Source: Octopus sinensis
Taxonomy: Eukaryota
DNA: 64,000 nt
Direction of reading: 5' to 3'
Assembly: GCF_006345805.1 (NCBI RefSeq)
Contig: NC_043010.1
Span: 62,558,001-62,622,000, forward strand
Each line of letters starts with the position of its first letter. Within the stretch, counting starts at the first letter, position 1. Positions 3,212-63,090 of the stretch are shown here, one piece after another. A program made the position numbers and the translations under genes. Under the pieces are notes generated by a model. That model was not told the DNA's origin. It ran no database searches and was given only the letters and a program-made list of their open reading frames with translations.

Positions 3212-4075
3212 AGATTAGACTGGGCCTGGTGCAGCCCCCTGGCTTCCCAGACCCTAGTCGAACCGTCCAAGCCATAGCGGACTTAAACGATAAGAAAAAA
3301 AAATATCATCATTGTCGTCGTTTAATGTCCGCTTTCCATACTGGCATGGGTTGGATGGTTTGACTGAGGACTGGCAAGCTAGGAGGCTGCACCAGGCTCC
3401 AAATCTGATCTGGCAAAGTTTCTGCAGTTGGATGCCCTTCCTAACACCAACCACTCCGAGAGTGTAGTAGGTACTTTTACGCACCACCAGCATGAGGAGC
3501 AGTCTGGCAGTACTGGCAATGACCACACTCAGAAGGTGTTTTTTACATGACACATGCACGGGAGCCAGTCCGCCAGCTCTGGCAACGACCATGCTCGAAT
3601 GTTGTTTTTCATGTGCCACCAGCACATGTGCCAGTAAGGCAACGTTGACAATGAACATGCTCGAATGGTGCTTATTACGTGCCACCTGCATGGGAGCCAG
3701 TCAGTGGCTCTGGCAACAATCACGCTTTTAACGTTCCACTGGCATGATATCTATATGAGAGTTCATTGTTTCACAAGTTACTTGGTGCCACATAAAAAGC
3801 ACCCAGGACACTCTGTAAAGTCAATGGCATTAAGAAGGGCATCTTGCTGTAGAAACCATGCCAAAACAGCCAGGTGGGCCCAGCTCCTGTTGAACTGTCC
3901 AACCCATGCCAGCACGGAAGACAGACATTAAATGATGATGATATCTTTCTCTATCTATCTATCTATCTCATGCCAAAACAGACACAAAAGTCTGGTACAG
4001 TCTTCTGCCTAGCCCGCTTTGGTCAAACCGTCCAACCCATGCCAGCATGGAAGATGGACGTTAAATGATGATGAT
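3212..4075. mobile_element. cluster of family C copies in both orientations (3212-3291 +, 3305-3750 -, 3790-4075 +)
   Basis: Shared CCAACCCATGCCAGCATGGAA...TTAAA(C/T)GATGATG tails and internal ~60-66 bp subrepeats. Confidence 0.7.
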
Positions 4076-4741: not shown

Positions 4742-5473
4742 ATGATGCAATTCACTCTGCCAGAAATTTGGAAAGGACATGCTGTACTGCTTGGCATTTG
4801 CACCGGAAGCTCTAATATGAACATTTCAGAGTGTTTGGGTGTCAATCAGAGGACATGTACTGAGAGTGATAAAAATCAAACATCCAGTCAACATCATGGT
4901 GTTTGGAGTGATCACTAGTGATGGTGACATTATGTTGCCATTCATCTTCCCACACAGCCTCAGACTCAACATGGAGGCCTACATCAAATGCCTGGAGGAA
5001 ATAGTGCTGCCCTGGGTCAAGAGAGTGACTGCTGGAAGACCTTATGTCTGGCAACATGCCACACAAGCAGGAGAAGCCAGTCATGGCTGTCAGACAATTT
5101 CTGAAACCACATCACCCCTAACATCTGGCCACCTAACTCCCCAGACTGCAACCTCCTTGATTATAATTGTGTGGGGTGCAGTTGAGCAAGAAGCCAACAG
5201 AACTCCTTGTAACACCAAAGATGATCTGATGGCAAGGATTAAGGCAGCATTCACCAACTTAAACAAGGAGATTGCCCAGAAGAGCTGCAGGAGATTCTGA
5301 AGTCGTCTGGAGGCTGTGGTTGAAGCTAATGGCGATTTTATTGAATATATTTATTCTTTAGTATTTCAAGATATTTTAATGTAATTTTGGTAAATATATC
5401 TGTTAACACGAGATGTCAGTGTTATTTTCATTTTTGCGTAATTTAGACAATAGTTTATTCACTGCACCCTGTA
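4742..5473 (+). mobile_element. internally deleted Tc1/mariner-superfamily transposon (DD..D class), pseudogenised
   Basis: An N-terminal HTH-like segment (EIWKGHAVLLG...ISECLGVNQRT) is fused to KHPVNIMVFGVITSDG. A shifted frame gives WPPNSPDCNLLDY, and the C-terminus is F*SRLEAVVEANGDFIE. The right TIR ends ACTGCACCCTG|TA at 5471-5473; no left TIR was found. Confidence 0.85.
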
Positions 5474-9719: not shown

Positions 9720-9739
9720 TTGTGATTGTTTGATAACAG
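9720..9739 (+). promoter_or_regulatory. putative 3' splice acceptor just upstream of the ZNF-1 start codon
   Basis: TTGTGATTGTTTGATAACAG|CCATCAAAATG: T-rich tract with AG at 9738-9739, 8 nt before the ATG at 9748. Confidence 0.4.
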
Positions 9740-9747
9740 CCATCAAA

Positions 9748-12234
9748 ATGAGTATGTACCCGATACAGCCAGCGTACCCCAGTATGGGGGACCACTCCTC
9801 TATATACAACCAATCCATGTATTCGAATCAAAGCACCCATTTGAAAGAGACTGACAAGAACAGCCCATCGCAGGGTGCTAAAGGTTTCCGACAGCCCGAT
9901 ATTCCCCGGAAACATTTCAGCGAAGAAAACGTGCCCCTTATTAACAATGCTGGATCAAGCCAAGAAGAGATTGAAGTGCCAGCCCTTAACACCAGTACCA
10001 CCAACACTCTACCTCCTGTGGCACCTAACAACCAAGACAAAGAACTAACCTGTGCTTTTTGTAAAAAGGTTTTCCCAAACTCCTTTATCTTACGTACACA
10101 CGAACGCATTCACATGGGCGTGCGACCGTTTGCCTGTTCCTTTTGTAACAAGGAATTCTTCCAGTTGGTCGACTTAAAAACGCACTACTGTACGCACAGC
10201 CATGCCACCAATAACATGTCGCTCTCTACAAACCAGAAGGCGTACCAATGTTCAGTGTGTAACAGGAGCTTTGCTCATAGAGGCAACCTGAAGCTTCATC
10301 TGAGGATGCATTCAGGGGACAAACCGTTTGCTTGTGACGTCTGTGGCAAGACTTTCGCACAGAAAAATAGCCTTACCGATCATAAAAGAGTGCATACAGG
10401 AGACTTGTTCTTCTGTCAGTTCTGCCAAAAAGCATTTTGTAACCAGTTTTTCTTGCAGAACCACGAGAGAGCCCACACGGGGGAGAAACCTTTTCATTGT
10501 GATTTCTGTGATAAAGCGTTTTCTCAGAGAGGCAACTTGAAGACACATCTCAGAACACACACAGGTGAGAAGAACTTTGTCTGCGATGCCTGTGGTAAGG
10601 CATTCTCTCAAAAGAACTGCCTGACTGACCACAAACGGCTACACACTGGTGACCTCTTCTACTGTCAGTACTGTAAAAAAGGATTCTGCAATCAGTTTTT
10701 CTTAAAGATTCATGAAAAAGTACACACGGGAGATTTATATTATTGCAACTACTGCAAGAAAGGGTTTCCGAATCAGTTTTTCCTGGAAAACCACACCAGG
10801 TCTCATACTGGAGAGAAACCATTCCGGTGTTTGTTTTGTCCACAAGTTTTTTCACAACGTGGCAATTTAAAGACCCATCTACGAACGCACACAGGGGAGA
10901 AACCCTTCCAGTGTGAAGTTTGTGGCAAGGGTTTTGCACAAAAGACTAATTTAAACGACCACAAAAGACTCCATACCGGAGAGCTTTATTATTGTAACTA
11001 CTGCAAAAAACCATTTTGTAATAAATTCTTCTTAAAAATTCACGAGCGCATACACACAGGGGATTTATTTTACTGCTCTTATTGTAAAAAAGGCTTCACA
11101 AATGAGTTCTTCCTGAAAAACCATCTCAGAGTGCACACAGGGGAGAAACCGTTTCAGTGTGAATTTTGCAATCAAACATTTGCGCAGCGAGGCAACTTGA
11201 AGCAACATTTACGAAAACACACAGGGGAGAAACCATTTAACTGTGAACTTTGTGGCAAGTGTTTCTCTCAGCGAAACAACTTAACCGACCATAAACGTGT
11301 GCATACTGGAGAACTCTTCTTCTGCAGCTTCTGTAAGAAGCCGTTTTGTAACCAGTTTTTCCTAAAAAATCACGAAAGAGCTCACACTGGAGAAAGACCG
11401 TTCCAATGCAACTTCTGCAAGAAAACTTTCTCTCAGAGAGGCAATCTCAAGCTCCACCTTAGGACCCACACTGGGGAAAAGCCTTTTACCTGTAGTGTAT
11501 GCGACAAGTCCTTCTCTCAACGGAATAGTCTCATAGATCACCAGCGGATTCACAGCGGAGATCTATACTTTTGCGGAATTTGTAAGAAGGGCTTCTGTAA
11601 CCAGTTTTTCTTAAAAACTCACGAGAAAACCCATGGAATTGTAGAGGATAGCCAGTCAAAACAGATCAGTTGTGAGTTTTGTGGCGAGGTTTTTGCACAG
11701 CAAAGTGAGTTAAAGGTACACATACAAACTCATACACCGGCGGAGAAACGCTATAGCTGCCAGATTTGCGGGGAGCAGTTTTTACACAGGGTTTCCTTAA
11801 CAAACCATAAATGTCCAGCAGCAAGCAGTAACTCGAACAGCTGCAGGATGTACTCCAAACTGCCCCAACAGACCGTGGAGCCAAGCAGCTCGAACATAAC
11901 AAACGACAAGACTGTATATAATTCGTCTCCCTCATCGTGCGACTCTTTAGCTCATGTCAAGGATATTGTTAGCACACAGAAAATCAGCTCGTTGAAAAAC
12001 AATAGTAGATCTTGTACAACGGTCCAACCGGAGTCGCACCGAGATACACAAGTCCCTCCTGTGCGACCACAGCCATCACCAGCTTCTTCTTCATCATATT
12101 TACATGGCATGCCTCACATTTGGGAAAATAACTACCTCTGGTCACGAGGTTACCCCATGCCACCCCTGTTAGGCTCAAGTTGGGCAGCAAATGTGCCCAG
12201 CGGTGTCTCCTGTGGCCCAAAGCAAACAAAGTAA
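9748..12234 (+). CDS. C2H2 zinc-finger protein, 21 fingers (20 C2H2 + terminal C2HC), 828 aa, single coding exon (ZNF-1)
   Basis: Uninterrupted ORF with repeated CxxC-x3-F-x5-L-x2-H-x3-H fingers and TGEKPF linkers at 10051-11814. The track starts at TTG 9730; the first ATG is at 9748. No KRAB/SCAN/BTB-like domain was recognised. Confidence 0.95.
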   Translation: MSMYPIQPAYPSMGDHSSIYNQSMYSNQSTHLKETDKNSPSQGAKGFRQPDIPRKHFSEENVPLINNAGSSQEEIEVPALNTSTTNTLPPVAPNNQDKELTCAFCKKVFPNSFILRTHERIHMGVRPFACSFCNKEFFQLVDLKTHYCTHSHATNNMSLSTNQKAYQCSVCNRSFAHRGNLKLHLRMHSGDKPFACDVCGKTFAQKNSLTDHKRVHTGDLFFCQFCQKAFCNQFFLQNHERAHTGEKPFHCDFCDKAFSQRGNLKTHLRTHTGEKNFVCDACGKAFSQKNCLTDHKRLHTGDLFYCQYCKKGFCNQFFLKIHEKVHTGDLYYCNYCKKGFPNQFFLENHTRSHTGEKPFRCLFCPQVFSQRGNLKTHLRTHTGEKPFQCEVCGKGFAQKTNLNDHKRLHTGELYYCNYCKKPFCNKFFLKIHERIHTGDLFYCSYCKKGFTNEFFLKNHLRVHTGEKPFQCEFCNQTFAQRGNLKQHLRKHTGEKPFNCELCGKCFSQRNNLTDHKRVHTGELFFCSFCKKPFCNQFFLKNHERAHTGERPFQCNFCKKTFSQRGNLKLHLRTHTGEKPFTCSVCDKSFSQRNSLIDHQRIHSGDLYFCGICKKGFCNQFFLKTHEKTHGIVEDSQSKQISCEFCGEVFAQQSELKVHIQTHTPAEKRYSCQICGEQFLHRVSLTNHKCPAASSNSNSCRMYSKLPQQTVEPSSSNITNDKTVYNSSPSSCDSLAHVKDIVSTQKISSLKNNSRSCTTVQPESHRDTQVPPVRPQPSPASSSSYLHGMPHIWENNYLWSRGYPMPPLLGSSWAANVPSGVSCGPKQTK

Positions 12235-15416: not shown

Positions 15417-15787
15417 TGTATATACGTGTGTGTGTGTCTGTGTGTGTGTGTGTATATGTATATATGTATACATACATATTTATATATCTGTACACCACCT
15501 CAAACACTTTATACATATATATATATATATATACATACATACATATATATGTGTGTATAGGGTATATATACATGCATATATATATATATATATATGCATG
15601 TATGTATATATAAACATGCTTGTATGTATGTATAGATTTATATATATATATATATATACGAATGAAGAAAAGTTTCTTTCTTGTATCTGACTCATTCTAT
15701 TCTCTGTTGTTAAATACACTCACTCATATCCTCATTTATGGGGTATATATATATGTATATATATAAATATATATGTCAGTGTGTATT

Positions 15788-15861
<74 letters not shown>

Positions 15862-16070
15862 ATATTCACATGTGCATATGTTACACACATACACTTGTAT
15901 ATATAAATATGTGTGTGAGCGTCTGTGTATATACATATGTATGTACACATAGACATATAAATGTGGGTGTGTGTGTATATTTGTATGTATATACAAATAC
16001 CCATTATTATTATGTATGATAGATTTTTAAAGAATGTCTATATGTATATGCACGTGTGTGTGTGTATAGA
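15417..16070. repeat. compound (TA)n/(TG)n microsatellite field
   Basis: Directly visible, including a long (TA)n run near 15793-15865. Confidence 0.9.
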
Positions 16071-17638: not shown

Positions 17639-18462
17639 CTAGGTTGAAGAAAAATGCTTGTGTGCTGTGTTAAAATAATGATTTTTTTATGCAAGAATTT
17701 ATTCAAAATTAACAACAACTATTCTTCAAAATAAAGGCCATCATTTTCCATGACCTTCTGCCAACAATCTGCAAGCTTTCAGATTTGGTCAAAGTACCAA
17801 TCCTTTGGCTTTCATCATCATCATCATCATTTAGCGTCTGCTTTCCATGCTAGCATGAGTTGGACGGTTCAACTAGGGTCTGTGAAGCCAGAAGGCTGCA
17901 TCTGGCCCAGTCTGATCTGGCAGTGTTTCTACAGCTGGACGCCCTTCCTAACGCCAACCACTCCGTCAGTGTAGTGGGTGTTTTTTACGTGCCACCCGCA
18001 CAGGTGCCAGACAGAGCTGGCAAACGGCCACGGACGGATGGTGCTTTTACGTGCCACCCGCACAGGGGCCAGGCAAGGCTGGCAACGGCCACGAACAGAT
18101 GGTGCTACGAAAAATTCTTGACAGGCTTCTTCAACTTCATCGAATGACTCAAATCGGCAACCTTTCATAAAATGCTGCATTGTTCAGAAGGGACCGTAGT
18201 CAGATGAAGCAACATCTGGACCATAGGCTGGATGCAGCAGAACTTCCACTCCATCCAATTCTTCAGTCTTGTTGCTGGTCTTTCTGACTGTATGTGGCTC
18301 TGCATTGTCTGGTTGAAACAAAGTACATTATTGACAAACAAGTCTTGGGTACTTTTCAACTAACACATCGCAGACTTGATCAAGTTACCCTAGTTAAAGT
18401 TCAGCATTGATGGCACAACCATTCGGCACAAGTTTGGTACACAAACTTTTTCCTCAACCTAA
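17639..18462 (-). mobile_element. internally deleted mariner (DD34D-type) element, split by a family C insertion
   Basis: The minus strand encodes AINAEL...EKYPRLV, QPDNAEPH...EVLLHPAYGPDVASSDY, MQHFMKGCRFESFDEVEEACQEFF and, after the insertion, KPKDWYFDQI*KLADCWQKVMENDGLYFEE*. TIR pair TAGGTTGA(A/G)GAAAAA at both ends, with TA at 18463-64. Confidence 0.85.
17812..18103 (-). mobile_element. family C (RTE 3'-UTR-type) insertion nested in the mariner
   Basis: (CAT)n plus the family C core interrupts the transposase between EFFVA and KPKDW. Confidence 0.75.
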
Positions 18463-18810: not shown

Positions 18811-19152
18811 TACACATACTCACATATCCTTCATTTGTTTAACATCTGATGTTCCAAGCAAACAGGGCTTGGATGTGAATTGGAGGCATCATTTCATAGC
18901 TGGATGCCTTTCCTGTTACCAGCCCTTTGTTGTTTTTTAAGAAAGAGATTGTTTTTTTTTTTGCAGATGTCTTTGAAAGTGCAGAGCAACTGGTCATAAA
19001 TAATATCAGTAAATAATATCAACACCTACATCGTGCTGCAGAAATAGCAGCAAGTGAAATATCATTATTTGTGCACCTTTTTTACGATCACACACATACA
19101 TGTGCACGTGCACACCCACACAATTATGCACAATTGTACATATATGTACATA

Positions 19153-19237
<85 letters not shown>

Positions 19238-33010: not shown

Positions 33011-34224
33011 TGGCACTGTGTTGTCTGCCTTGTCTGGTTTGTGGATATTTAAATTTAAATGCCTTTTCAGACCCGTGTGTCGCTTGGAGGTCTTACTACA
33101 AATATGGCACATGAGTGTGTCTGCTGGAATGAACTTTGTATCATTTGGGCCAGCCGCATAAAGATGAGTTCTGAGATGTGCTTTCGAAACAAAAAACTCA
33201 TACCCCAGATTCAGCAACTGAGGGATGACTCCATTTCTGCATTTGACACACTGTTACAGTTCTGTAGTTCTCTTTTCATTTTTGAGGCAGATTTTTTTAT
33301 AGTTTGATGCCCTTCCTGCCATCACTCGTCACCACTCATGCACACACAAATATATGTGACTGGCTTCGTTTAGTTTCCATCTACCAAATTCTCTCACAAG
33401 ACTTTGGTTGACCCAGGGCTATAGTAGAGAACACTTGCACCAAGTGCCATGTGGTGATATTGAACCTGAAAGTAAGAGGTTGGGAAGCAAGCTTCTTGAC
33501 CACATAGCCATGTCTGCACACACACACACACACACACACATGCATGGCCCTCGTGCCAGTGGCGCGTAAAAGCACCCACTACACTCTTGGATTGGTTGGT
33601 GTTGGGAAGTATGCATGCCACAGCAAACAGGTAGGGATTGAGGCTGTCTTCTTATTTGCCGGCTCCTATTAAACCGTCCAACCCATGCCATCATGGAAAA
33701 TGAACAATGATGATGATGTATATCCAGGCTGAATGGTCCTTCCTGATCCCTAGGCTCAGAAGGCCAATTTCCCACTTTCTATGATGTGTATATTCTTACC
33801 TTGGACGGGACCCCAGTCTGTTGCAGCTGAGTGGTTTGCATCAACATCAAATAAAATATTTTACTCCAAGAATACAATGCATCGCCCAGTCTGGGAATCG
33901 AACTCACACTCTTATGATGATGAGTGCAACAGCCTCACCACTAAGTCATATGCCTCCACATATATTTATGGTGTGTTAATATTAGGTGCTTCTGCACCGA
34001 AAATATTCAAAAAGCTTAAATATCTGATAAGATTACTTATCATTATTCGTGTTATTTTTTTAAACAGAACTCTTGATAGGCAAAGGCGTGGCTGTGTGAT
34101 ACGAAGTGAGTGGTTCCGGGTTCAGTCCCACTGCATGGCACCTTGGGCAAGTGTCTTCTACTTTAGCTTCAGGCAAATCAAAGCCTTGTGAGTGGATTTG
34201 ATAAACAGAAACTGAAAGAAGCCT

Positions 34225-34892
34225 ATCATCATCATCATCATCATCGTCGTTTAACGTCCGTTCTCCATGCTAGCATGGGTTGGACGGTTCGACCGGGGAT
34301 TCTGGGAAGCCAGAAGGCTGCACCAGGCTCCAGTCTAATTTGGCAATGTTTCTACAGCTGGATGCCCTTCCTAACGCCAACCACTCCGTGAGTGTAGTGG
34401 GTGCTTTTTACGTGCCACCTGCACAGGTGCCAGGCGGGGCTGGCAACGGCCACGGTCAGATTGGTGTATTTTATGTGCCACCGGCACGGAAGCCAGTCGA
34501 GGCGGTGCTGGCATCGGCCACGAGTCGGATAGTGCTTTTTACGTACCACCAGACCAGGGATCCTGGCTGGTTCAATTCGATTTCGATTTCGCTTGCCCCA
34601 ACATGTCTTCACAAGCAAAGGGGGTTGGCAAGGGTGCCTGTCGTACGGTCGCATTGGAGTATTTTACGTGCCACGGCCACGAGTCGGATAGTGCTTTTTA
34701 CGTACCACCAGACCCATATATATATATATGACTACACTCGTGGAGTGGTTGGCGTTAGGAAGGGCATCCAGCTGTAGAAACACTGTCAGATCAGACTGGA
34801 GCCTGGTGTAGCCCCTGGCTTCCCAGACCCTGGTCGAACCGTTCAACGCATGCTAGCGCGGAAAACGGACGTTAAACGATGATGATGATGAT
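34225..34892. mobile_element. two family C copies in inverted orientation (34225-34560 -, 34731-34892 +)
   Basis: Arm 34225-34398 is largely the reverse complement of 34731-34892. Confidence 0.85.
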
Positions 34893-37111: not shown

Positions 37112-37945
37112 CATCCTCCTCCTCCTCATCATCGTTTAACATCTGTTTTCCATGCTGGCGTGGGTTGGACGGTTTGACTGGGGTCTGGAGAGTCAGCAGC
37201 TGCACCAGGCTCCATTCTGATCTGGCAGAGTTTCTACAGCTGGATGCCCTTCCTCATGCCAACCACTCCAAGAGTGTAGTGGGTGCTTTTTACGTTCCAC
37301 TAGCACAGGAGCCAGTCAGGCGGTCCTGGCATCAATTATGTTTGGATAGTGCTTTTTACGTGCTACAGGCACCGGGACCGGTCAGTGTGCTATGGCATTG
37401 GACACATTCGGGTGGTGCTTTTAATGTACCACCGGTAGAGGAGCCAGTCAGGCAGCCCTGGCATTGATCACATTCGGATAGTGCTTTCTATGTGCCACCA
37501 GTACAGAAGCCAGTCAAGGGACACTGGCATCGGCCACGTTCGGGTGGTGCTTTTTACATGCTACGGGTATGGCATCGGCCATGTTCAGGTGGTGCTTTTT
37601 ACATGCCACTCTGCAGATGAGCCAGTCAGGCGGCCCTGACATCGATCATATTCAAATAGTGCTTTCTATGTGCTGCTGGTACAGGAGCCAGTCAGGGGAC
37701 ACTGGCATCAGCCATGTTCAGGTGGTGCTTTGTACATGCTATGGGCACAGGATCCAGTCAGGGGGCTATAGCATCGGCCACGTTCGGGTGGTGCTTTTTA
37801 CATGCCACTCCGCAGAAGAGCCAGTCAGGTGGCTCTGGCATCGATCACGTTCAAATAGTGCTTTCTATGTGCCACCGGTACAGAAGCCAGTCAGGGGAGA
37901 CTGGCATCAGCCATGTTGAGGTGATGCATTTTACGTGCCACATTG
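37110..37945 (-). mobile_element. family C copy with about 10 internal 66-bp tandem repeats
   Basis: GTGCTTT unit starts at 37283, 37349, 37415, 37481, 37547, 37592, 37659, 37725, 37791, 37858 and about 37924. Confidence 0.85.
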
Positions 37946-38857: not shown

Positions 38858-39590
38858 TTCACCTGTCTGCCTATCACCTGGCTGATGCTCTGCTACGAGA
38901 TGATGTCCCGCAATTGGAGATCTTCTGACTTGATTCTGACCCAGCAACAACCAGTTTATAATTCCAGCAAACCCGACCGTTTGTGTGTCTATTGCTTTCA
39001 CCTTCATCAACTTTAAGAAGGAGGAGAAAAAAAACAAAGGATTACTTTCAAGTCCCTTCCCAGATCTGAACTCTTCTTATGCATAATATCTCATCATCTC
39101 CACATTTTTAATTACTACAAGAGGAAATTTTAATGTTTTATATTATATTTTATAGACATCTTTTTTGACATCTTTGGACCCTACACTGGAGGGAGCACTT
39201 ACACCTTTAGAATAATGGGATTGGTTTGTTTAGGTTATTGATAAATCATTGGAATGTACCCTGTTTGACTGACCATAGGTGGACTGTGCACTGTACATCT
39301 GCCATTATCTTCTCATTTGTTAATTGGGATTAATTGGGTGACTACAAGAATATAAGAATACATTGAGTCCAAGATTTGGCAGTGGTGCCAGCACACACAC
39401 ACACACACACACACATTTGGTATGTGTTAAGATCAGAGTTAAAACATTCCAGGATGTATAAAATGTGAAAGACTGAAGAAGTTTCTGGAAATTTCCAAAC
39501 CTATGTTGTAGGTGATAATATTAATAATAACATTAAGAATACAGAATAATAATTATTATTAATAATTATATTAATAATAATATTAATAAT

Positions 39591-39630
<40 letters not shown>

Positions 39631-39695
39631 GTAGTAGTAATAATATAGTAATAACGGTTATAATATAGATAATAGTGTAAAAGAGCAAAGTGACG

Positions 39696-40201
39696 ATGTA
39701 CCAGATGCAGTGTGGGGGAAAGCAACAACAGTTTAACAACAACTGTTGTGGTATTAATAATGATAGTCAGGCTGAGGTACACACTTGCGGTGGAACGGCA
39801 TCACAGAACGGATTTACAAACTTTATGGAGCTGATCAAGAAACCAGACAAGTCCCGGGACAAACCTTTCAAATGTGGAATATGCCGTAAAGGATTTACGT
39901 TGAAAGCCTACCTGAATCGACACCTGTTGGCCCCTGAGCCCGGTAAACACTTCCCCTGCAGTTATTGCAGCAAGATCTTTCCGCAGAGGGACCGCCTCGA
40001 GACGCACGAACGCACTCACACGGGGGTCAAGCCGTTTGTCTGCAACATCTGCTCCAAGTCGTTTTCACAGAAGTCACACCTGAACACCCACAAGCACGTC
40101 CACACCGGCACAAAGTCGCCAAACGCCGTCGACCGGAGCATGAAGCGCCGCAAGACCCTGGCGATGACCATGATGATGAATTCCATGCAACAGCATCAGC
40201 A

Positions 40202-40233
<32 letters not shown>

Positions 40234-41414
40234 AGCAGCAACATCATCACCACCATCAGCATCACCAGCACCACCAACAACATCAGCACCACCTTCAACA
40301 TCAGCATCAGCATCAACACCAGCATCAACACCACCAACATCAACACCAGCATCAACACCACCAACATCAGCATCAGCATCATCAACACCAGCATCATCAG
40401 CATCATCATCAGTTCCATCATTTCGAGAACCACAGCAAGACCTGCCCCCAGCATCTTAACCAGGTGGGCAAACGTAAAAGCGGGCCCGGCAGCGCAGATA
40501 AACCCTTTAAGTGTGATGTATGCCGGAAAGGCTTCACCCTGAAGGCCTACCTCAACCGTCACTTATTGGCTCCTGATACAGGTAAACACTTCCCTTGCTC
40601 TTACTGCCACAAGGTTTTTCCCCAAAGGGACCGACTGGAGAATCACGAAAGGACTCATACTGGGGTGAAACCATTCCATTGTACAATTTGTGGCAAGAAC
40701 TTTGCCCAAAAGTCCCATTTAAACAAGCACCAAAATGTGCACAAAGCGGACCGGATGTCAGCAACCAGTGTGCCTTCAGCTTCAGTCACATCAACCTCGT
40801 CGTCATCGGGCGCTAACCAAGCCCCAAACCTTCCTAAACCTCCATCGATGATTTCACCTCAAGCTTCGTCATCTTCAGGGACCTACACTACCCAGATGAT
40901 TAACCAAACTGCGGCGATCCACAAACAGGCTGTTATGACAACAAACACACAGTATTCACAACAGCAGATCAAATATTCTACTGCGGCCCCACAGCAGCAG
41001 CAGCAGCAACAACAGCAGCAACAACAACAACAACAACAACAACAGCAACCAGCTGCCCAGAAAGATCCATCGACAATGTCGGCCTGCTCGCATCAGATGA
41101 TGCATCAACATGCGCCGCTAAGGCAACAACAGCAGCAACAGCCGCAGCAGCAGCAGCAGGCGCCGCCGCCGCCGCCTCCGCCACCATCTCAGCAGTCATC
41201 GAACATGACTGCAACCTCGACAATGAACACGGCCACCTACCATCAACAGATGGTGCCGCAAAGAGCTGCTGAGAATAATTACAACTGGAAGCGTAACGCT
41301 GCCATAACGGCCAACTGGAATGCAGGCTGGACCAACACATCGAACCCGACTTATGGCCAGAGGAAATGCGAGAGCCAGGAGGCTGTCCACAACATTCAGA
41401 CATTGATGCAGTGA
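39696..41414 (+). CDS. C2H2 zinc-finger protein with two 3-finger cassettes, a Q/H tract and polyQ; 572 aa, single coding exon (ZNF-2)
   Basis: Uninterrupted ORF; in-frame stop at 39678-80 upstream, first ATG at 39696. Cassettes at 39861-40109 and 40500-40748; basic NLS-like KRRK and KRK motifs. Confidence 0.93.
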
Positions 41415-50860: not shown

Positions 50861-51468
50861 CCAGGAATCTCGGTCCCCTGTCATCCCCTCTGTGGATCCC
50901 AGGAATCTCGGTCCCCTGTCATCCCCTCTGTGGATCCCAGGAATCTCGGTCCCCTGCCATCCCCTCTGTGGATCCCAGGAATCTCGGTCCCCTGCCATCC
51001 CCTCTGTGGATCCCAGGAATCTCAGTCCCCTTTCATCCCCTCTGTGGATCCCAGGAATCTTGGTCCCCTGTCATCCCCTCTGTGGATCCCAGGAATCTCG
51101 GTCCCCTGTCATCCCTTCTGTGGATCCCAGGAATCTCGATCCCCTGTCATCCCTTCTGTGGATCCCAGGAATCTCAGTCCCCTGTCATCCCCTCTGTGGA
51201 TCCCAGGAATCTCAGTCCCCTTTCATCCCCTCTGTGGATCCCAGGAATCTCGGTCCTCGGTTATCCCCTTTGTGGATCCCAGGAATCTCGGTCCCCTGTC
51301 ATCCCCTCTGTAAATCCCAGAAATCTCGATCCCCTGTCATCCCCTCTGTGGATCCCAGGAATCTCGGTCCCCTGTCATCCCCTCTGTGGATCCCAGGAAT
51401 CTTGATCCCCTGTCATCCCCTTTGTGGATCCCAGGAATCTCAGTCCCCTGTCATCCCCTCTGTGGATC
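50861..51468. repeat. minisatellite, 16 x 38 bp (CCAGGAATCTCGGTCCCCTGTCATCCCCTCTGTGGATC)
   Basis: Unit starts every 38 nt from 50861 to 51431; no spacers. Confidence 0.95.
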
Positions 51469-52269
51469 CCAACTGGTCTTTATTTTATTGACCCCGAAAG
51501 AGTAAAAGGTAAAGTCAACCCTGGTGGTATTTGAACCCAGGAGGAGAAATCGGAAGAAAAACCGTTAAGCCTTTTTTCTGTCATCATAACAACCTTACCA
51601 CCTTACAAGTGAATATAATACTGCTTTCAAATTTTTGGCACAAGGCCGGCAATTTCAGAGGATGTGGTAATTCTGACCCCACTACTTATTTTATGGACCC
51701 CGAAATGTAAGGACGGACAGAATGTTGCTAAGTAATTTTTCCAGCATGGTTACAAGTCTGCTAGCTCCCTGCCTTACAAGTGAATATAATATTGATTTCA
51801 AATTTTGGCACAAGGCCAGCAATTTGGTGGAATGGGGCATGTCAATTACACTGGCACCAGTAGTCAACTGGTACTTATTTTATAAGCCCTGAAAGGATGA
51901 AAGACAAAGTCAACCCCTGCAGAAATTGAACTCAGAATGCAAAGACAGGCGCTAAGCATTTCACCGGGCATGCTAACGATTCTGCCAGTTTGACACCTTT
52001 CTAACAAAAGCAATACTGGTTTCATATTTTGGCACAAGGCCAGCAATTTTGGAGGGGGGGGGCAGGTAAATCAACTTCATTGACCCAAGAGCTCAGATCA
52101 TACTTATTTTACTGACCCCCAAAAGGCCCTAAGTAATGCTTTTTACAATGTGTAGTTAAACCTGGAGCTGTTTCTGGACAATGACCGTAATTTAAATCAT
52201 TTTGGAACTTGCTGTGTTGAAGTTTACTGAGGTTGGGTCAAGATTTTGAGGGAAATCCTTCCAGTTTAC

Positions 52270-52750: not shown

Positions 52751-53509
52751 ATAACTACCTCCAGTACAGGGTATTTTACAAAACCAACAGAAAACCTCTT
52801 TGTAAGTTAACCAACCTGCTAGAAATGACAACTAAGTCTCCCTCAAATACATACACTCCCATTTAAAAAAGGGACACATTTGAGAATGTAGTCTTAGATA
52901 CACTTGATGATTGGTCTCCTAGATCAAGTCTGACCTAGGGCTAAATGACAACAGTGAGACACATGACCCCTTATGTTAATCTTCTCCTCCAGGTCCTAAT
53001 TTTCATAATTTATTATCTCCATCCAACCATGCCCACCTCCACTTCCCAGAATATTGAAAGTTAATCGATGTCTTACCTCTTGGCAAGTGTAAAGAAAAAC
53101 ATAGGACAAAACGGTAGGAAAAAAAGGAGGATGGAAGGAAGAGAGAGAAAGAAAGGAAGAGAAATGAAGAAAGAGAGGGAGAGAAAGAAAGAAAGAGAGA
53201 GAGGGAGAGAAAGAATGAATGAAAGAAAGAAGGGAGAGAGAGAAAGATAGACAGAAAGAAAGAGGCAGAGAGAGAAAGAAAGAAAGAGAGGAAGGAAGGA
53301 AGATACAAAGAGAGAGAGAAAGAGAGAAACGAAGGAAGGAAGAGAGAGAGAAAGCAAGAAAGAGAGAAAGAAAGCAAGAAAGAGAGAAAGAAAGGAAGGA
53401 AGAGAGAAAGAAAGGAAGGAAGAAGTCCCCTGAGGGGAGTGTTGTGCTGTTGTTGTTGTTTGTTGACAGCCAAGACAGGATGTATCAGAGCTGGTCTTTT
53501 ATTTATTTT

Positions 53510-56500: not shown

Positions 56501-57050
56501 CCCTCCCCCTATACTGCCTGTCCCCCTCCTCCATCGATGATAACATTCGGAACTTAAAATAGCGATGACATAGGATGGTATGATGACTAAATATAAGGTA
56601 ACTTCAACGATATGTCTACTTTTTCACTGAATGACTTCACAACTCTCATCATCTCAACGACTGACGCATTTCATACAAACACCTTTCTTCTTTCTTTCTT
56701 TCTATTTATTTACATTCGGCCTGCTTCTTGTACATTGGCATATATATATATATACATATGTATATATATGTATGTGTGTGTGTGTTTGTATGTATATGTA
56801 TGCTCACAAACATATACATATAAACATAAATATATATAGTTATAAGTGTATGTATGTATATACATATGTGTATATGTGTATATATGATTACATATATTTA
56901 CATATATATATACATATGTGTGACTATAAGTATATGTGTGTATATATTTATATATGTGTGTATGTATGTATATGTATATATGTGTGTGTCTGTGTATATA
57001 TGATTATATATTTACATATATATATACATATGTGTGAATATAAGTATATG

Positions 57051-57131
<81 letters not shown>

Positions 57132-57315
57132 TTTACATATATATATACATGGCACAGAAGTATATACATATTTAGTTATATTTACAGATATGTGTACATG
57201 TTAATCTTAATCCATTCTTACCTGAACCTTATACTTATAATCTATTTACATTTACAGTATATAAACATCTTTAAAGCTATGTATGTACACACACACACAA
57301 TCACAATACATATAT

Positions 57316-57350
<35 letters not shown>

Positions 57351-57462
57351 AATAAATATAGGTTGGTAAAACGAACAGGATAAATAGAAATTAGTAGATG
57401 AGAAATGTATGTTCGTTATATGTTTAATTAGCAGAAAGTTACAGGTGTTACGTGAGGGTTGT

Positions 57463-57540
57463 GAGTTTTGTTCCTGATACTTTACAAAACTCTGATGAGT
57501 GCCAGGAACAAAACTCTTGTTCCTTGAGTCACTCTTGTAA
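57463..57540 (+). ncRNA. decayed type I hammerhead-like motif with an upstream inverted arm (H5)
   Basis: TTACAAAACT-CTGATGA(57492-98)-GTgC CAG GaAC-aAAA-CTC(9-nt loop)GAGTC(57526-30)-ACTCTTGTAA. Stem I pairs 8/10, stem III 4/4, GUC site intact, G12 replaced by A. Confidence 0.5.
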
Positions 57541-57626
57541 CATTCAGCTGGTTAACAACAATAATAATAAAAGATATGTGTGTGTCTGTATAAAAAATAA
57601 ATTTTATAAATATCTTTATGTGAATA

Positions 57627-57670
<44 letters not shown>

Positions 57671-57746
57671 CATACATGTATTTATGTATAATATATATAT
57701 GTGTACACACATATACATATACACACACATACATATACACATGCAA

Positions 57747-57777
<31 letters not shown>

Positions 57778-57906
57778 CAAATACATACACATATATATAT
57801 ATATACATATATATATATACATACATATATATATATTATACATATATATATAATATATATATATATCTCTACATATATCATCATCATATATACATACATA
57901 CATACA

Positions 57907-57937
<31 letters not shown>

Positions 57938-58149
57938 ATGATGATGATAATGATGATATATGTATTCACTAATTATATGAATATATATATCTATATATAT
58001 ATCATCATCATATATACATACATACATACATAATATATATATATATATATATTATGATGATGATAATGATGATATATGTATTCACTAATTATATGAATAT
58101 ATATATATCATCTATACATATATCATCATCATATATACATACATACATA

Positions 58150-58187
<38 letters not shown>

Positions 58188-58797
58188 ATGATGATAATGA
58201 TGATATATGTATATGAATATATATATCATCATCATCATCATATATATATATATATACATACAAGCATACATATATATATATATATATTTATATTTATAAC
58301 CACCAGAAGTTAAAGAATGACTCAAAGTCGAAAAGTTTCGTGCAGTTGCACATGTCAATAAGTGTCGATGCACGAAACTCTCAGCATTTGAGTCTCTCCT
58401 TGACTTCTGCCCAGTTATTAATGACAAAGAAATACCTATATTTCTCCACACACACACACACACACACACACACACCATATACCTGTTATATATATATATT
58501 TACAATTATATCCATACATCATCATTGTCGTCGTCATCGTCGTTGTTTCTCTGCACTTTTCCATTCTTGCCTGACTCTGATGGAATTCATTGAAGCAGAT
58601 CTTACTATGGCCGCTTGCCCGTCCTATCACCAACCCTCACCACTCTCCAAGCGAGTCGAATATTCCCTCCACCCCCACCCCGCACCACCATCCTCGGCCA
58701 GACATGTTTCCACGGAAAAACTGAACATGAATGACACCCCTTGCTTGCGACTGTTGTGTGATGTCATGACTAGGACACACACACATGTATATATAGG

Positions 58798-62743: not shown

Positions 62744-63057
62744 GGTGCAGGCTGGGCTGTGTGGTAAGAAGCTTGCTCCCAGCACATGGTTCCGGGTTCA
62801 GTCCCACTGCGTGGCACCTTGGGCAAGTGTCTTCTCCTATAGCTTTGGGCCAACGAAAGCCTTGTGAGTGGATTTGGTAGACGGAAACTGAAAGAAGCCT
62901 ATCATATACACACACACACGCATACACACACACATATGCACACGCACACACATACACACACACATACACACACATACACACACACACGCACATACACACA
63001 CACTCACACGCACGCACACATATACACACATACACACACACACGCACATACATACAC

Positions 63058-63090
<33 letters not shown>

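What the first reader, a model, noticed from the sequence alone, without database searches (positions are those of the whole stretch)
10243..11634. ZNF-1 fingers follow a higher-order grammar ABC-ABCC-ABCC-ABC-ABC with an aromatic, short-linker C finger
Seen: fingers 3-19 fall into three helix classes (-1..+6). A = Q/H-R-G-N-L-K-x, B = Q-K/R-N/T-S/C/N-L-x-D, C = N-Q/K/E-F-F-L-x-I/N/T. Every C finger is entered through a 6-residue linker HTG[DE]L[FY][FY]C instead of the 7-residue HTGEKPFxC. Five of seven C fingers carry an extra Cys at -2. Single C fingers look like hybrids of the two C fingers in the ABCC units. Known: positions -1, 2, 3 and 6 read bases, and TGEKP caps the helix on DNA; Phe at both +2 and +3 is atypical. 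Inference: AB pairs read a repeated ~6-bp site while C fingers act as spacers or bind methyl groups, RNA or protein. That would suit a periodic target such as a satellite or TE subrepeat.
Basis: partly seen in the sequence, partly recalled or inferred. Interest (0 to 1): 0.72.

Follow-up and report, generated by a model that had tools for sequence, protein, structure and literature searches.

The report
Octopus zinc-finger gene with repeating finger triplets
This octopus-type gene encodes about 21 zinc fingers laid out as old, well-conserved three- or four-finger units, each ending in an unusual phenylalanine-rich finger on a shortened linker. The pattern is real and shared by a small cephalopod-only gene family, but what the odd finger does has not been tested.

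Summary
Window 9754..12234 (+) is one intact 826-aa C2H2 zinc-finger ORF. Fingers 3-19 (10249..11634) read exactly ABC-ABCC-ABCC-ABC-ABC. All seven C fingers (helix N-x-F-F-L) are entered by a six-residue H-to-C linker, TG[DE]L[FY][FY], instead of seven. Five of the seven have Cys at -2.

The pattern is not a recent duplication. The DNA units (249 or 330 nt) are only 63-73% identical and dS between them is saturated, while dN is about 0.2.

It is a family trait. Octopus, Argonauta and Sepia hold paralogues with the same N-terminal (MYPxQP) and C-terminal (WENNYLWSRG) motifs and the same ABC(C) architecture and short linker. Fingers cluster by class and by position across paralogues. One FF-bearing paralogue is 97.9% identical across its fingers between Octopus and Argonauta.

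Both features are rare elsewhere. Six-residue linkers make up 1.3% of linkers and FF at +2/+3 occurs in 0 of 3863 fingers in 200 unrelated poly-ZNFs.

Sister paralogues keep the short linker with an ordinary Q-I-N-L helix in the C slot, so the linker alone does not imply a spacer. The "hybrid C" claim is weak.

I class this as a new variant of a known kind, of moderate interest.

The parts
9754..12234 (+). ZNF-1 coding sequence: single open reading frame, 826 aa plus stop. An alternative ATG lies at 9748 (MSMYP...).
   Evidence: Paralogues start MYPVQP / MYSFQP. P0014 and P0215 are single-exon in O. sinensis and O. vulgaris.
9754..9870 (+). Family N-terminal motif (MYPIQPAYP...IYNQSMY...THLKETDK).
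   Evidence: Alignment A1, invariant M1 Y2 Q5 Q20 Y23 K31 K35.
10051..10197 (+). F1 (10051-10113, C-like helix NSFILRT, no preceding finger) and F2 (10135-10197, QLVDLKT).
   Evidence: F1 clusters with the C-finger clade together with F1 of both paralogues.
10249..10476 (+). Unit 1, ABC: F3 10249-10311, F4 10333-10395, F5 10414-10476.
   Evidence: Positional orthologues are Ov1 F3-F5.
10498..10806 (+). Unit 2, ABCC: F6 10498-10560, F7 10582-10644, F8 10663-10725, F9 10744-10806.
   Evidence: F8 pairs with Ov1_8 in the tree; the unit aligns column for column with Ov1 F6-F9. AF2 model gives five beta-beta-alpha fingers, pLDDT 84.
10828..11136 (+). Unit 3, ABCC: F10 10828-10890, F11 10912-10974, F12 10993-11055, F13 11074-11136.
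   Evidence: 300-nt direct repeat with unit 2 at 72% identity, spacing 330 nt.
11158..11385 (+). Unit 4, ABC: F14 11158-11220, F15 11242-11304, F16 11323-11385.
11407..11634 (+). Unit 5, ABC: F17 11407-11469, F18 11491-11553, F19 11572-11634.
   Evidence: F19 (NQFFLKT) pairs with Ov1_12 (NQFFLKT) in the finger tree.
10396..10413 (+). First of seven short (6-codon) linkers, TG[DE]L[FY][FY]. The others are at 10645-10662, 10726-10743, 10975-10992, 11056-11073, 11305-11322 and 11554-11571.
   Evidence: linker lengths. (one-residue gap opposite the Pro of TGEKP). (TGDL-YY aligns to TGQKPYH in P0005).
11671..11814 (+). Degenerate closing AB pair: F20 11671-11733 (QQSELKV, A-like) and F21 11758-11814 (HRVSLTN, ends NHKCP like the last finger of P0215).
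12091..12234 (+). Family C-terminal motif (SYLHGMPHIWENNYLWSRGYPMPPLLGSSW...SCGPKQTK, then stop). It ends about 30 aa earlier than in the paralogues.
   Evidence: A profile of this tail finds only 12 proteins in 1.84 billion representatives.
39696..41414 (+). ZNF-2, a probable distant family member on the same strand, 28 kb downstream. It has four canonical fingers in two duplicated blocks, a polyQ/His spacer, and a tail ...ENNYNWKRN...NW. It has no short linkers and no FF helix.
   Evidence: The tail similarity is weak (hhalign E 5e-4, probability 31%).

Best explanation
ZNF-1 is an intact member of a small, old, cephalopod-restricted family of single-exon poly-zinc-finger proteins. They are presumably sequence-specific nucleic-acid-binding transcription factors.

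The array is built from a three- or four-finger super-repeat, A-B-C(-C). That architecture was already in place before the paralogues split, and purifying selection has held it since.

Shown here:
- the grammar itself
- the one-codon-shorter linker into every C finger
- the age of the units
- class-wise and position-wise orthology across paralogues
- very high conservation of the finger array between species

Inferred:
- The A helix (Q-1, G2, N3) and B helix (Q-1, N/S3, D6) are adenine-type reading helices. Each AB pair therefore reads a similar A-rich hexamer, roughly 5'-C(A/T)A-NAA-3'.
- The C finger still docks on the nucleic-acid backbone. It keeps the C-x-K-x-F lysine, gains a second Lys (CKK), and keeps K/R at +9.
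- Toward the bases, however, C presents an aromatic, non-hydrogen-bonding face (F+2, F+3, an extra aromatic before Cys1, and Leu replacing Lys-Pro in the linker). The shortened linker holds it out of the normal 3-bp register.
- C fingers would then act as register-setting connector fingers between two-finger reading modules. They would make hydrophobic or shape contacts rather than reading a triplet, so the protein would bind a row of similar A-rich half-sites at defined but unequal spacings.
For: Grammar and linkers.

Age and selection:
- Codon choice at identical residues is barely above background (0.46-0.50 against 0.40).
- NG86 dS is undefined (saturated) for all ten unit pairs, with dN 0.18-0.31.
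- F3-F9 against paralogue Ov1 gives dN 0.16, dS 2.3, omega 0.07.

Family:
- Shared termini and architecture in P0003/P0215, P0014, P0005 and P0051.
- The named hits to the tail profile in the exhaustive search are all cephalopod.
- Fingers cluster by class and position, not by gene.
- Conservation of the finger region against the rest of the protein: Octopus-Argonauta 97.9% against 84.6%; P0005-P0051 92.5% against 47%.

Rarity: 6-residue linkers are 1.3% of linkers and FF is 0 of 3863 fingers.

A/B resemble adenine-reading helices. The best PDB fold match for F6-F10 is Aart, a designed ANN-triplet reader (45-48% identity). DNA-bound PRDM9, ZFP568, CTCF and ZNF410 arrays follow at TMq 0.5-0.63.

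Covariation suggests that C and its linkers form a packed unit:
- Ile at +6 occurs only in C fingers that are followed by another short linker.
- The second aromatic before Cys1 co-occurs with the FF helix, whereas paralogues with QINL helices have K/N/R there.

The backbone-contact roles of the C-x-K-x-F lysine and of K/R at +9 come from my own knowledge of Zif268 and consensus-finger structures, not from a tool result.
Against: - No binding data exist for any family member.
- Sister paralogues keep the same short linker with an ordinary Q-I-N-L helix in the C slot. The ancestral C slot may therefore have read bases in spite of the short linker.
- The AF2 model shows nothing unusual. It is a generic DNA-wrapping array (pTM 0.51), and the higher pLDDT on C1-C2 (87-90) is confounded by their central position.
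- C fingers still score best as classical zf-C2H2.
- The hexamer prediction rests on a recalled recognition code that is known to be unreliable.
- The window gene's own orthologue was not found, so conservation is shown for paralogues rather than for this gene.
Confidence: 0.4

Rival explanations
1. C fingers are ordinary base-reading fingers with an unusual specificity, for example Phe at +3 packing on thymine or 5-methylcytosine methyl groups. The array reads contiguous triplets. The one-residue linker deletion is a tolerated quirk that was copied along with the unit.
For: The same slot and linker carry a standard [LQ]QINLRN helix in P0005/P0051 and LQINLKN/QKINLKN in P0014. Those helices cluster with canonical-linker fingers of the more distant member P0130. 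Similar 6-residue linkers occur sporadically in ordinary arrays (P0013 HTGNLFKC, P0089 HTGETYKC). The AF2 model superposes on DNA-bound arrays. Zn ligands, core residues and basic backbone-facing residues are all kept in C.
Against: FF at +2/+3 was absent from 3863 background fingers. C fingers carry further aromatic residues around the DNA-facing tip. The linker Lys is lost. C scores lower on zf-C2H2 than A does (19-26 against 32 bits).
Confidence: 0.28
2. C fingers are not DNA readers at all. They are protein-protein surfaces (self-association or cofactor binding) or RNA/single-strand-binding surfaces interleaved with DNA-reading AB pairs.
For: An exposed aromatic helix face is strictly conserved. 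The second C fingers F9 and F13 reach the gathering score of Pfam zf-C2H2_jaz, the dsRNA-binding type (23.4 and 26.0 against 22.6). From my own knowledge, hydrophobic helix faces are typical of protein-binding C2H2 fingers such as the Ikaros dimerisation fingers, and aromatic stacking is typical of RNA-binding fingers.
Against: The classical zf-C2H2 score equals or exceeds the jaz score for the same fingers. Spacing is H-x3-H, not the H-x5-H of JAZ/U1-type fingers. Interleaving seven such fingers at fixed positions within a DNA-type array, on shortened rather than lengthened linkers, fits an on-DNA role better.
Confidence: 0.17
3. The grammar has no functional meaning. It is the footprint of tandem duplication of a three-finger block, possibly homogenised by gene conversion.
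For: Arrays do grow by block duplication. The DNA shows the 249/330-nt super-repeat, and the window gene has two more units than P0215 or P0005.
Against: Units are only 63-73% identical in DNA with saturated dS, so there has been no recent duplication or conversion. Class-defining residues are nevertheless kept. The architecture and the positional orthology are shared by paralogues and species. Omega is about 0.07.
Confidence: 0.05

Closest known systems
ZFX / ZFY / ZNF711 even-odd two-finger repeat
   Same: A long C2H2 array built from a conserved multi-finger super-repeat whose member fingers have distinct sequence signatures. It was proposed long ago to imply alternating roles in DNA recognition ('jumping linker'), as summarised in PMC11030341.
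   Different: The period there is 2 fingers, not 3-4. The classes differ by H-x3-H against H-x4-H spacing and an aromatic swap in the core. Here all fingers are H-x3-H, and the odd class differs by a one-residue-shorter linker and an FF recognition helix. The two families are not homologous (different termini, vertebrate against cephalopod).
TFIIIA fingers 4 and 6 (spacer fingers)
   Same: A natural precedent for fingers inside an array that bridge rather than read triplets, joined by non-TGEKP linkers. This is the working analogy for the C finger (from my own knowledge; 1tf6 and 8ffz appear as distant fold matches).
   Different: TFIIIA has nine unique fingers with no repeating grammar. Its spacer fingers do not carry FF helices, and its atypical linkers differ in length and sequence.
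Designed poly-finger proteins: Aart (PDB 2i13) and strings of two-finger units
   Same: A/B helices (QRGNLKT, QKTNLND) resemble the Q/N-rich ANN- and CNN-reading modules, and Aart is the best PDB fold match. From my own knowledge (Moore, Klug and Choo 2001), engineered arrays bind better when two-finger units are separated by modified linkers. That is the same logic as AB modules separated by C.
   Different: The engineered arrays use longer linkers, not an extra finger on a shorter linker. They are artificial.
Generic Krueppel-type poly-ZNFs of the cephalopod C2H2 expansion
   Same: Same domain type and same clade. NCBI names for relatives are generic (ZFP2, ZNF665-like, ZNF271-like).
   Different: The expansion paper PMC12513265 does not mention linkers or motifs. 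This family has its own conserved termini, no KRAB/SCAN/BTB/ZAD domain, very slow finger evolution, and few members (12 tail hits).
BCL11B homotypic finger modules
   Same: Separate finger modules within one protein carry near-identical base-contact residues and bind clustered copies of a similar six-nucleotide motif (abstract of PMC13225276).
   Different: That case has two arrays separated by long non-finger sequence, not a periodic array with connector fingers.

Membership tests
Classical C2H2 (Krueppel-type) zinc-finger protein | Tandem C-x2-C-x12-H-x3-H fingers with a conserved F/L core, recognised by Pfam zf-C2H2. | tested here: met
   20 regular fingers. PF00096 scores 278 bits (cut-off 25.2) and PF13465 scores 362 bits. 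AF2 gives five beta-beta-alpha units for F6-F10.
Classical C2H2 (Krueppel-type) zinc-finger protein | Seven-residue TGEKP-type H/C link between all consecutive fingers. | tested here: not met
   9 of 16 linkers within F3-F19 are canonical. The 7 that enter C fingers have 6 residues and lack Lys-Pro.
KRAB / SCAN / BTB / ZAD zinc-finger subfamilies | An N-terminal effector domain detectable by Pfam. | tested here: not met
   Only finger models pass their cut-offs in the whole-protein Pfam scan.
Cephalopod MYPxQP...WENNYLWSRG poly-ZNF family (unnamed; P0003/P0215, P0014, P0005, P0051) | N-terminal MY(P/S)xQP..Y.Q..Y...K motif and C-terminal YL[HQ]..[PS]..WE.NY.WSR...PP...W...C..KQ motif. | tested here: met
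   Invariant columns in A1 and A2. The tail profile retrieves only this family.
Cephalopod MYPxQP...WENNYLWSRG poly-ZNF family (unnamed; P0003/P0215, P0014, P0005, P0051) | Array of A-B-C(-C) units with a 6-residue linker into the C slot, closed by an AB pair. | tested here: met
   Finger tables for the window gene, P0215, P0216, P0014, P0005 and P0051. Finger tree.
Cephalopod MYPxQP...WENNYLWSRG poly-ZNF family (unnamed; P0003/P0215, P0014, P0005, P0051) | Single coding exon, clustered on one chromosome. | tested here: inconclusive
   The window ORF is uninterrupted. P0014 and P0215 are single-exon and lie 112-115 kb apart in O. sinensis and O. vulgaris. The window's own chromosomal position is unknown, and a possible distant member lies 28 kb away in the window.
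ZFX/ZFY-type alternating fingers | Two-finger period with alternating H-x3-H and H-x4-H spacing. | tested here: not met
   All fingers F1-F20 are H-x3-H and the period is 3 or 4 fingers. The defining features are taken from PMC11030341.
JAZ / U1-type dsRNA-binding zinc fingers | C-x2-C-x12-H-x5-H spacing, long inter-finger linkers, and a Pfam zf-C2H2_jaz or zf-met match better than zf-C2H2. | tested here: not met
   Spacing is H-x3-H and linkers are short. The jaz score reaches its cut-off only for F9 and F13, and never exceeds the zf-C2H2 score.
TFIIIA-like spacer fingers | A finger shown by structure or footprinting to cross the minor groove without reading a triplet. | not testable with these tools
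   This needs a protein-DNA structure or binding data. The AF2 model without DNA is uninformative.

The most novel reading that the evidence does not exclude
The C finger is a previously unrecognised functional class of C2H2 finger. It would be a backbone-docked, aromatic-faced 'ruler' finger on a one-residue-shortened linker that does not read a triplet. It would instead fix the spacing and phase between two-finger reading modules, or read thymine/5mC methyl groups hydrophobically. Evolution would then have arrived at a modular '2 + connector' design for long arrays in cephalopods, conserved for well over 100 million years.
Probability: 0.25. Interest if true: 0.7.

Novelty: new variant of a known kind. 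Interest (0 to 1): 0.5.

Why it matters
How long natural zinc-finger arrays engage DNA is still unsettled: many long arrays show short motifs, and linker variants are poorly understood.

This family offers a clean natural experiment:
- a fixed three-class grammar
- a single-residue linker deletion tied to one class
- an FF helix not seen in about 3900 other fingers
- sister paralogues that keep the linker but carry a normal helix in the same slot

Comparing these paralogues by SELEX and by structure could show what a shortened linker and an aromatic recognition face do to register and specificity. That would inform both motif prediction and finger engineering.

The work also defines a small, slowly evolving, cephalopod-specific transcription-factor family. 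It is currently hidden under generic names within the large cephalopod C2H2 expansion.

Tried and rejected
1. A word-indexed search with a 65-aa C-C query found no candidate, although P0003 clearly shares more than 7 words with it. This is a limit of the index and not evidence of absence. One protein search was lost.
2. Whole-protein and profile searches were swamped by generic long ZNFs. Only four family clusters surfaced. P0131 (Tubulanus) scored high only because it has many fingers and its own unrelated two-finger repeat.
3. Exact look-ups of the window proteins, using both candidate start codons for ZNF-1 and one for ZNF-2, found nothing on record. The true orthologue and the species therefore remain unknown. 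Interspersed repeats match O. sinensis and O. vulgaris copies at 90-97%, so the window comes from an octopod close to Octopus.
4. TRF reports no tandem repeat in the gene. The gapless family finder does detect the super-repeat.
5. AF2 with Foldseek gave a generic array, and I draw no conclusion on finger packing. The second AF2 job was not used, because terminal-against-central pLDDT effects would confound any control.
6. The bacterial promoter/terminator scan is irrelevant to a eukaryotic gene and is disregarded.
7. The recent-duplication or gene-conversion origin was rejected.
8. A recombinant ('hybrid') origin of single C fingers was rejected as unsupported.
9. A scan of the window's tandem repeats showed no array that could be tied to the predicted A-rich half-site. 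With so weak a motif, this is not a test.
10. Literature searches found no description of this grammar, of the short linker class, or of this family.
Full report
**1. What is there**

Window 9730..12234 (+) is a single long ORF. From the ATG at 9754 (or 9748) it encodes 826 aa. The protein has 20 regular C-x2-C-x12-H-x3-H fingers plus a terminal finger ending NHKCP.

Pfam finds only C2H2-type finger models and no KRAB, SCAN, BTB or ZAD domain.

The surrounding sequence is eukaryotic and repeat-rich. Its interspersed repeats match copies in Octopus sinensis and O. vulgaris loci at 90-97%. The window is therefore from an octopod close to Octopus.

**2.

Fingers 3-19 (10249..11634) fall into three helix classes and read ABC ABCC ABCC ABC ABC.

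| Feature | Result |
|---|---|
| Linker into every C finger | 6 residues, TG[DE]L[FY][FY] (SGDLYF for F19) |
| The other nine internal linkers | 7 residues |
| Where the residue is missing | One-residue gap opposite the Pro of TGEKP when aligned to ZFP568 |
| Same point against a paralogue | TGDL-YY aligns to TGQKPYH in P0005 |
| Cys at -2 | 5 of 7 C fingers |
| Chance of the order | p = 2e-6 |
| Chance of the linker-to-C association | p = 5e-5 |

Phe-Phe at +2/+3 never occurs.

At DNA level the super-repeat is visible as five copies of a 215-nt unit spaced 249, 330, 330 and 249 nt. These spacings correspond to 83 and 110 codons, that is, ABC and ABCC units. Identity is 63-73%.

**3. The units are old and under selection**

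- Same-class fingers are 57-80% identical in protein but only 58-76% identical in DNA.
- Identical residues use the same codon in 46-50% of cases, against 40% between classes.
- Nei-Gojobori dS is undefined (saturated) for all ten pairs of ABC units, while dN is 0.18-0.31.
- F3-F9 against the positionally equivalent fingers of an Octopus paralogue gives dN 0.16, dS 2.3 and omega 0.07.

Recent duplication or gene conversion therefore does not explain the pattern.

**4. It is a family architecture**

Among thousands of generic hits, four protein clusters share three things with the window gene: an N-terminal MYPxQP motif, a C-terminal ...YLH.MPQSWENNYLWSRGFPMPP...W...CG.KQ motif, and the same grammar.

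A profile of the tail, searched exhaustively against 1.84 billion representatives, finds only 12 proteins. Every named one is cephalopod: Octopus vulgaris, O. sinensis, O. bimaculoides, Argonauta hians or Acanthosepion (Sepia) pharaonis.

Architectures (x = a finger outside the three classes):

| Protein | Species | Architecture | C-slot helix |
|---|---|---|---|
| P0215 / P0216 | Octopus / Argonauta | x x ABC ABCC ABC AB | NQFFL |
| P0005 / P0051 | O. bimaculoides / unknown (Logan) | x x ABC ABCC ABC AB | [LQ]QINLRN, same short linker |
| P0014 | Octopus | C x ABCC' ABCC' A A B | NQFFLKI then [LQ][QK]INLKN |
| Window gene | octopod | x x ABC ABCC ABCC ABC ABC A'B' | NQFFL |

A neighbour-joining tree of all finger cores groups fingers by class and then by position across genes. 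Examples are W5 with Ov1_5, W8 with Ov1_8, W19 with Ov1_12, W20 with Ov1_13 and W21 with Ov1_14. F1 of each paralogue falls in the C clade. The grammar therefore predates the paralogue split and extends over the whole array.

Finger arrays are far more conserved than the rest of the protein:

| Comparison | Finger region | Outside the fingers |
|---|---|---|
| P0215 Octopus vs P0216 Argonauta | 97.9% | 84.6% |
| P0014 vs P0218 (within Octopus) | 100% | 98.8% |
| P0005 vs P0051 | 92.5% | 47% |

P0014 and P0215 are single-exon genes lying 112-115 kb apart on one chromosome. The window holds a second probable distant member 28 kb downstream, ZNF-2, which has canonical linkers only.

**5. What this says about the C finger**

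Three points come from the comparison.

First, the short linker is older or more general than the FF helix. It accompanies both NQFFL and QINL helices. QINL-type fingers cluster with canonical-linker fingers of the more distant member P0130. The likely order is therefore an ordinary reading finger, then a one-codon linker deletion, then I/N changed to F/F in one subfamily. The rooting of this series is uncertain.

Second, the exposed face of C (N-1, F+2, F+3) is the best-conserved part of the finger. It must contact something specific, so a passive spacer is unlikely.

Third, C is aromatic throughout its DNA-facing tip. There is an extra F/Y before Cys1 that co-occurs with FF, an aromatic in the Cys knuckle in 6 of 7 fingers, and Leu replacing Lys-Pro. 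Yet C keeps the basic residues that contact phosphates in canonical fingers (CKK-x-F, and K/R at +9; that role is from my own knowledge). Ile at +6 occurs only where the next linker is also short.

Per-finger Pfam scores:
- C fingers are weaker classical fingers than A (19-26 against 32 bits on zf-C2H2).
- Only F9 and F13 touch the zf-C2H2_jaz threshold, and they never exceed their own zf-C2H2 score.

An AF2 model of F6-F10 gives five normal fingers (pLDDT 84, pTM 0.51). It superposes on DNA-bound arrays at TMq about 0.5-0.63, with the best match being Aart, the designed ANN-triplet reader. This fits the Q/N-rich A and B helices but says nothing decisive about C.

**6. Mechanism**

My best reading, at confidence about 0.4, has two parts:
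- AB pairs are near-identical two-finger modules that read an A-rich hexamer.
- C fingers remain on the nucleic-acid backbone but act as register-setting, hydrophobically contacting connectors.

The protein would then bind rows of similar half-sites at fixed but unequal spacings.

The main rival, at about 0.28, is that C reads a triplet with unusual, methyl-directed specificity. The QINL paralogues support this rival. Protein or RNA binding by C is possible (about 0.17). A purely historical footprint is essentially excluded (about 0.05).

Two findings argue against a fast-evolving satellite or TE target and for conserved cellular targets: the unequal unit lengths and the very slow evolution of the arrays. 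A period-3 low-complexity A-rich target would reconcile unequal units, but that is speculation.

**7. Comparison with what is known, and novelty**

The nearest precedent for a finger grammar is the even/odd two-finger repeat of ZFX/ZFY/ZNF711 (PMC11030341). It differs in period, in what distinguishes the classes, and in ancestry.

TFIIIA spacer fingers and engineered strings of two-finger units are functional analogies only.

The recent survey of cephalopod C2H2 expansions does not discuss linkers or motifs (PMC12513265). My other literature searches found no description of this family or grammar.

I rate this a new variant of a known kind. It is a real, conserved and unusual architecture whose function is open. 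Interest is 0.5.

**8. Limits**

- The window gene's own orthologue was not found, so conservation is shown through paralogues.
- The taxon of the Logan-derived sequences is unknown.
- The recognition-code prediction and the backbone-contact roles come from my own knowledge, not from tools.
- There are no binding or expression data for this gene.
- The ORF ends about 30 aa before the end of the paralogues' tails. Everything else about it looks functional.

Noticed in passing
window 39696-41414 (+): A second zinc-finger gene (ZNF-2) made of two copies of about 80 aa each. Each copy is a degenerate finger (C-x2-C-x12-H-LLAP) followed by two canonical fingers (QRDRLE[TN], QKSHLN[TK]). The copies are separated by a long polyQ / His-Gln run (27-nt repeat at 40203-40411). 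More polyQ follows, and the tail (...ENNYNWKRN...NW) weakly resembles the family tail, so this may be a distant tandem paralogue of ZNF-1.
   Followed up: partly
window 12232-12234 and downstream: ZNF-1 stops after ...SCGPKQTK, where the paralogues continue ...KQSKQTPWNNIQGIHAPSK... for about 30 more residues. The stop sits where the paralogues have Gln, and the downstream sequence shows no clear homology. This may be a lineage-specific truncation of the tail.
   Followed up: partly
window 50861-51471: A 38-bp satellite, 16 copies at 93% identity (consensus CCAGGAATCTCGGTCCCCTGTCATCCCCTCTGTGGATC). It produces three overlapping spurious ORFs.
   Followed up: no
window 4839-5300 (+): An ORF fragment that looks like the C-terminal part of a mariner/Tc1-type transposase (judged by eye, not run against any library).
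   Followed up: no
window 3475-3717, 17983-18106, 34224-34890, 37391-37941: Arrays and scattered copies of a repeat of about 62-66 bp (TTTTACGTGCCACC...GCCAGTCAG...). Related interspersed copies match O. sinensis and O. vulgaris loci at 90-97%, so this is probably an octopus SINE-type element. This is what places the window in or near the genus Octopus.
   Followed up: partly
P0089 (Thamnophis sirtalis ZNF420-like), residues ~260-960: An unrelated snake ZNF carries its own recurring block: QSGNLKT, then HTNCLK[IM], then a 6-residue linker HTGETYKC. Single-residue linker deletions can therefore arise and be propagated by block duplication in other lineages as well.
   Followed up: no
P0131 (Tubulanus polymorphus, 1408 aa): A nemertean poly-ZNF with a very regular two-finger alternation. 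One finger type ends H-x4-H (for example SRSSNRNIHMKQVH) and the other ends H-x3-H, joined by TDERPFKC and TGEKPFKC linkers. This is another natural higher-order finger grammar, unrelated to the cephalopod family.
   Followed up: no
window 15744-15865, 19140-19237, 39515-39654, 53142-53424, 56740-58298, 62903-63090: Many long microsatellites (TA, ATA, AGAA, AC). The TA tracts at 56.7-58.3 kb coincide with a strong negative GC skew.
   Followed up: no
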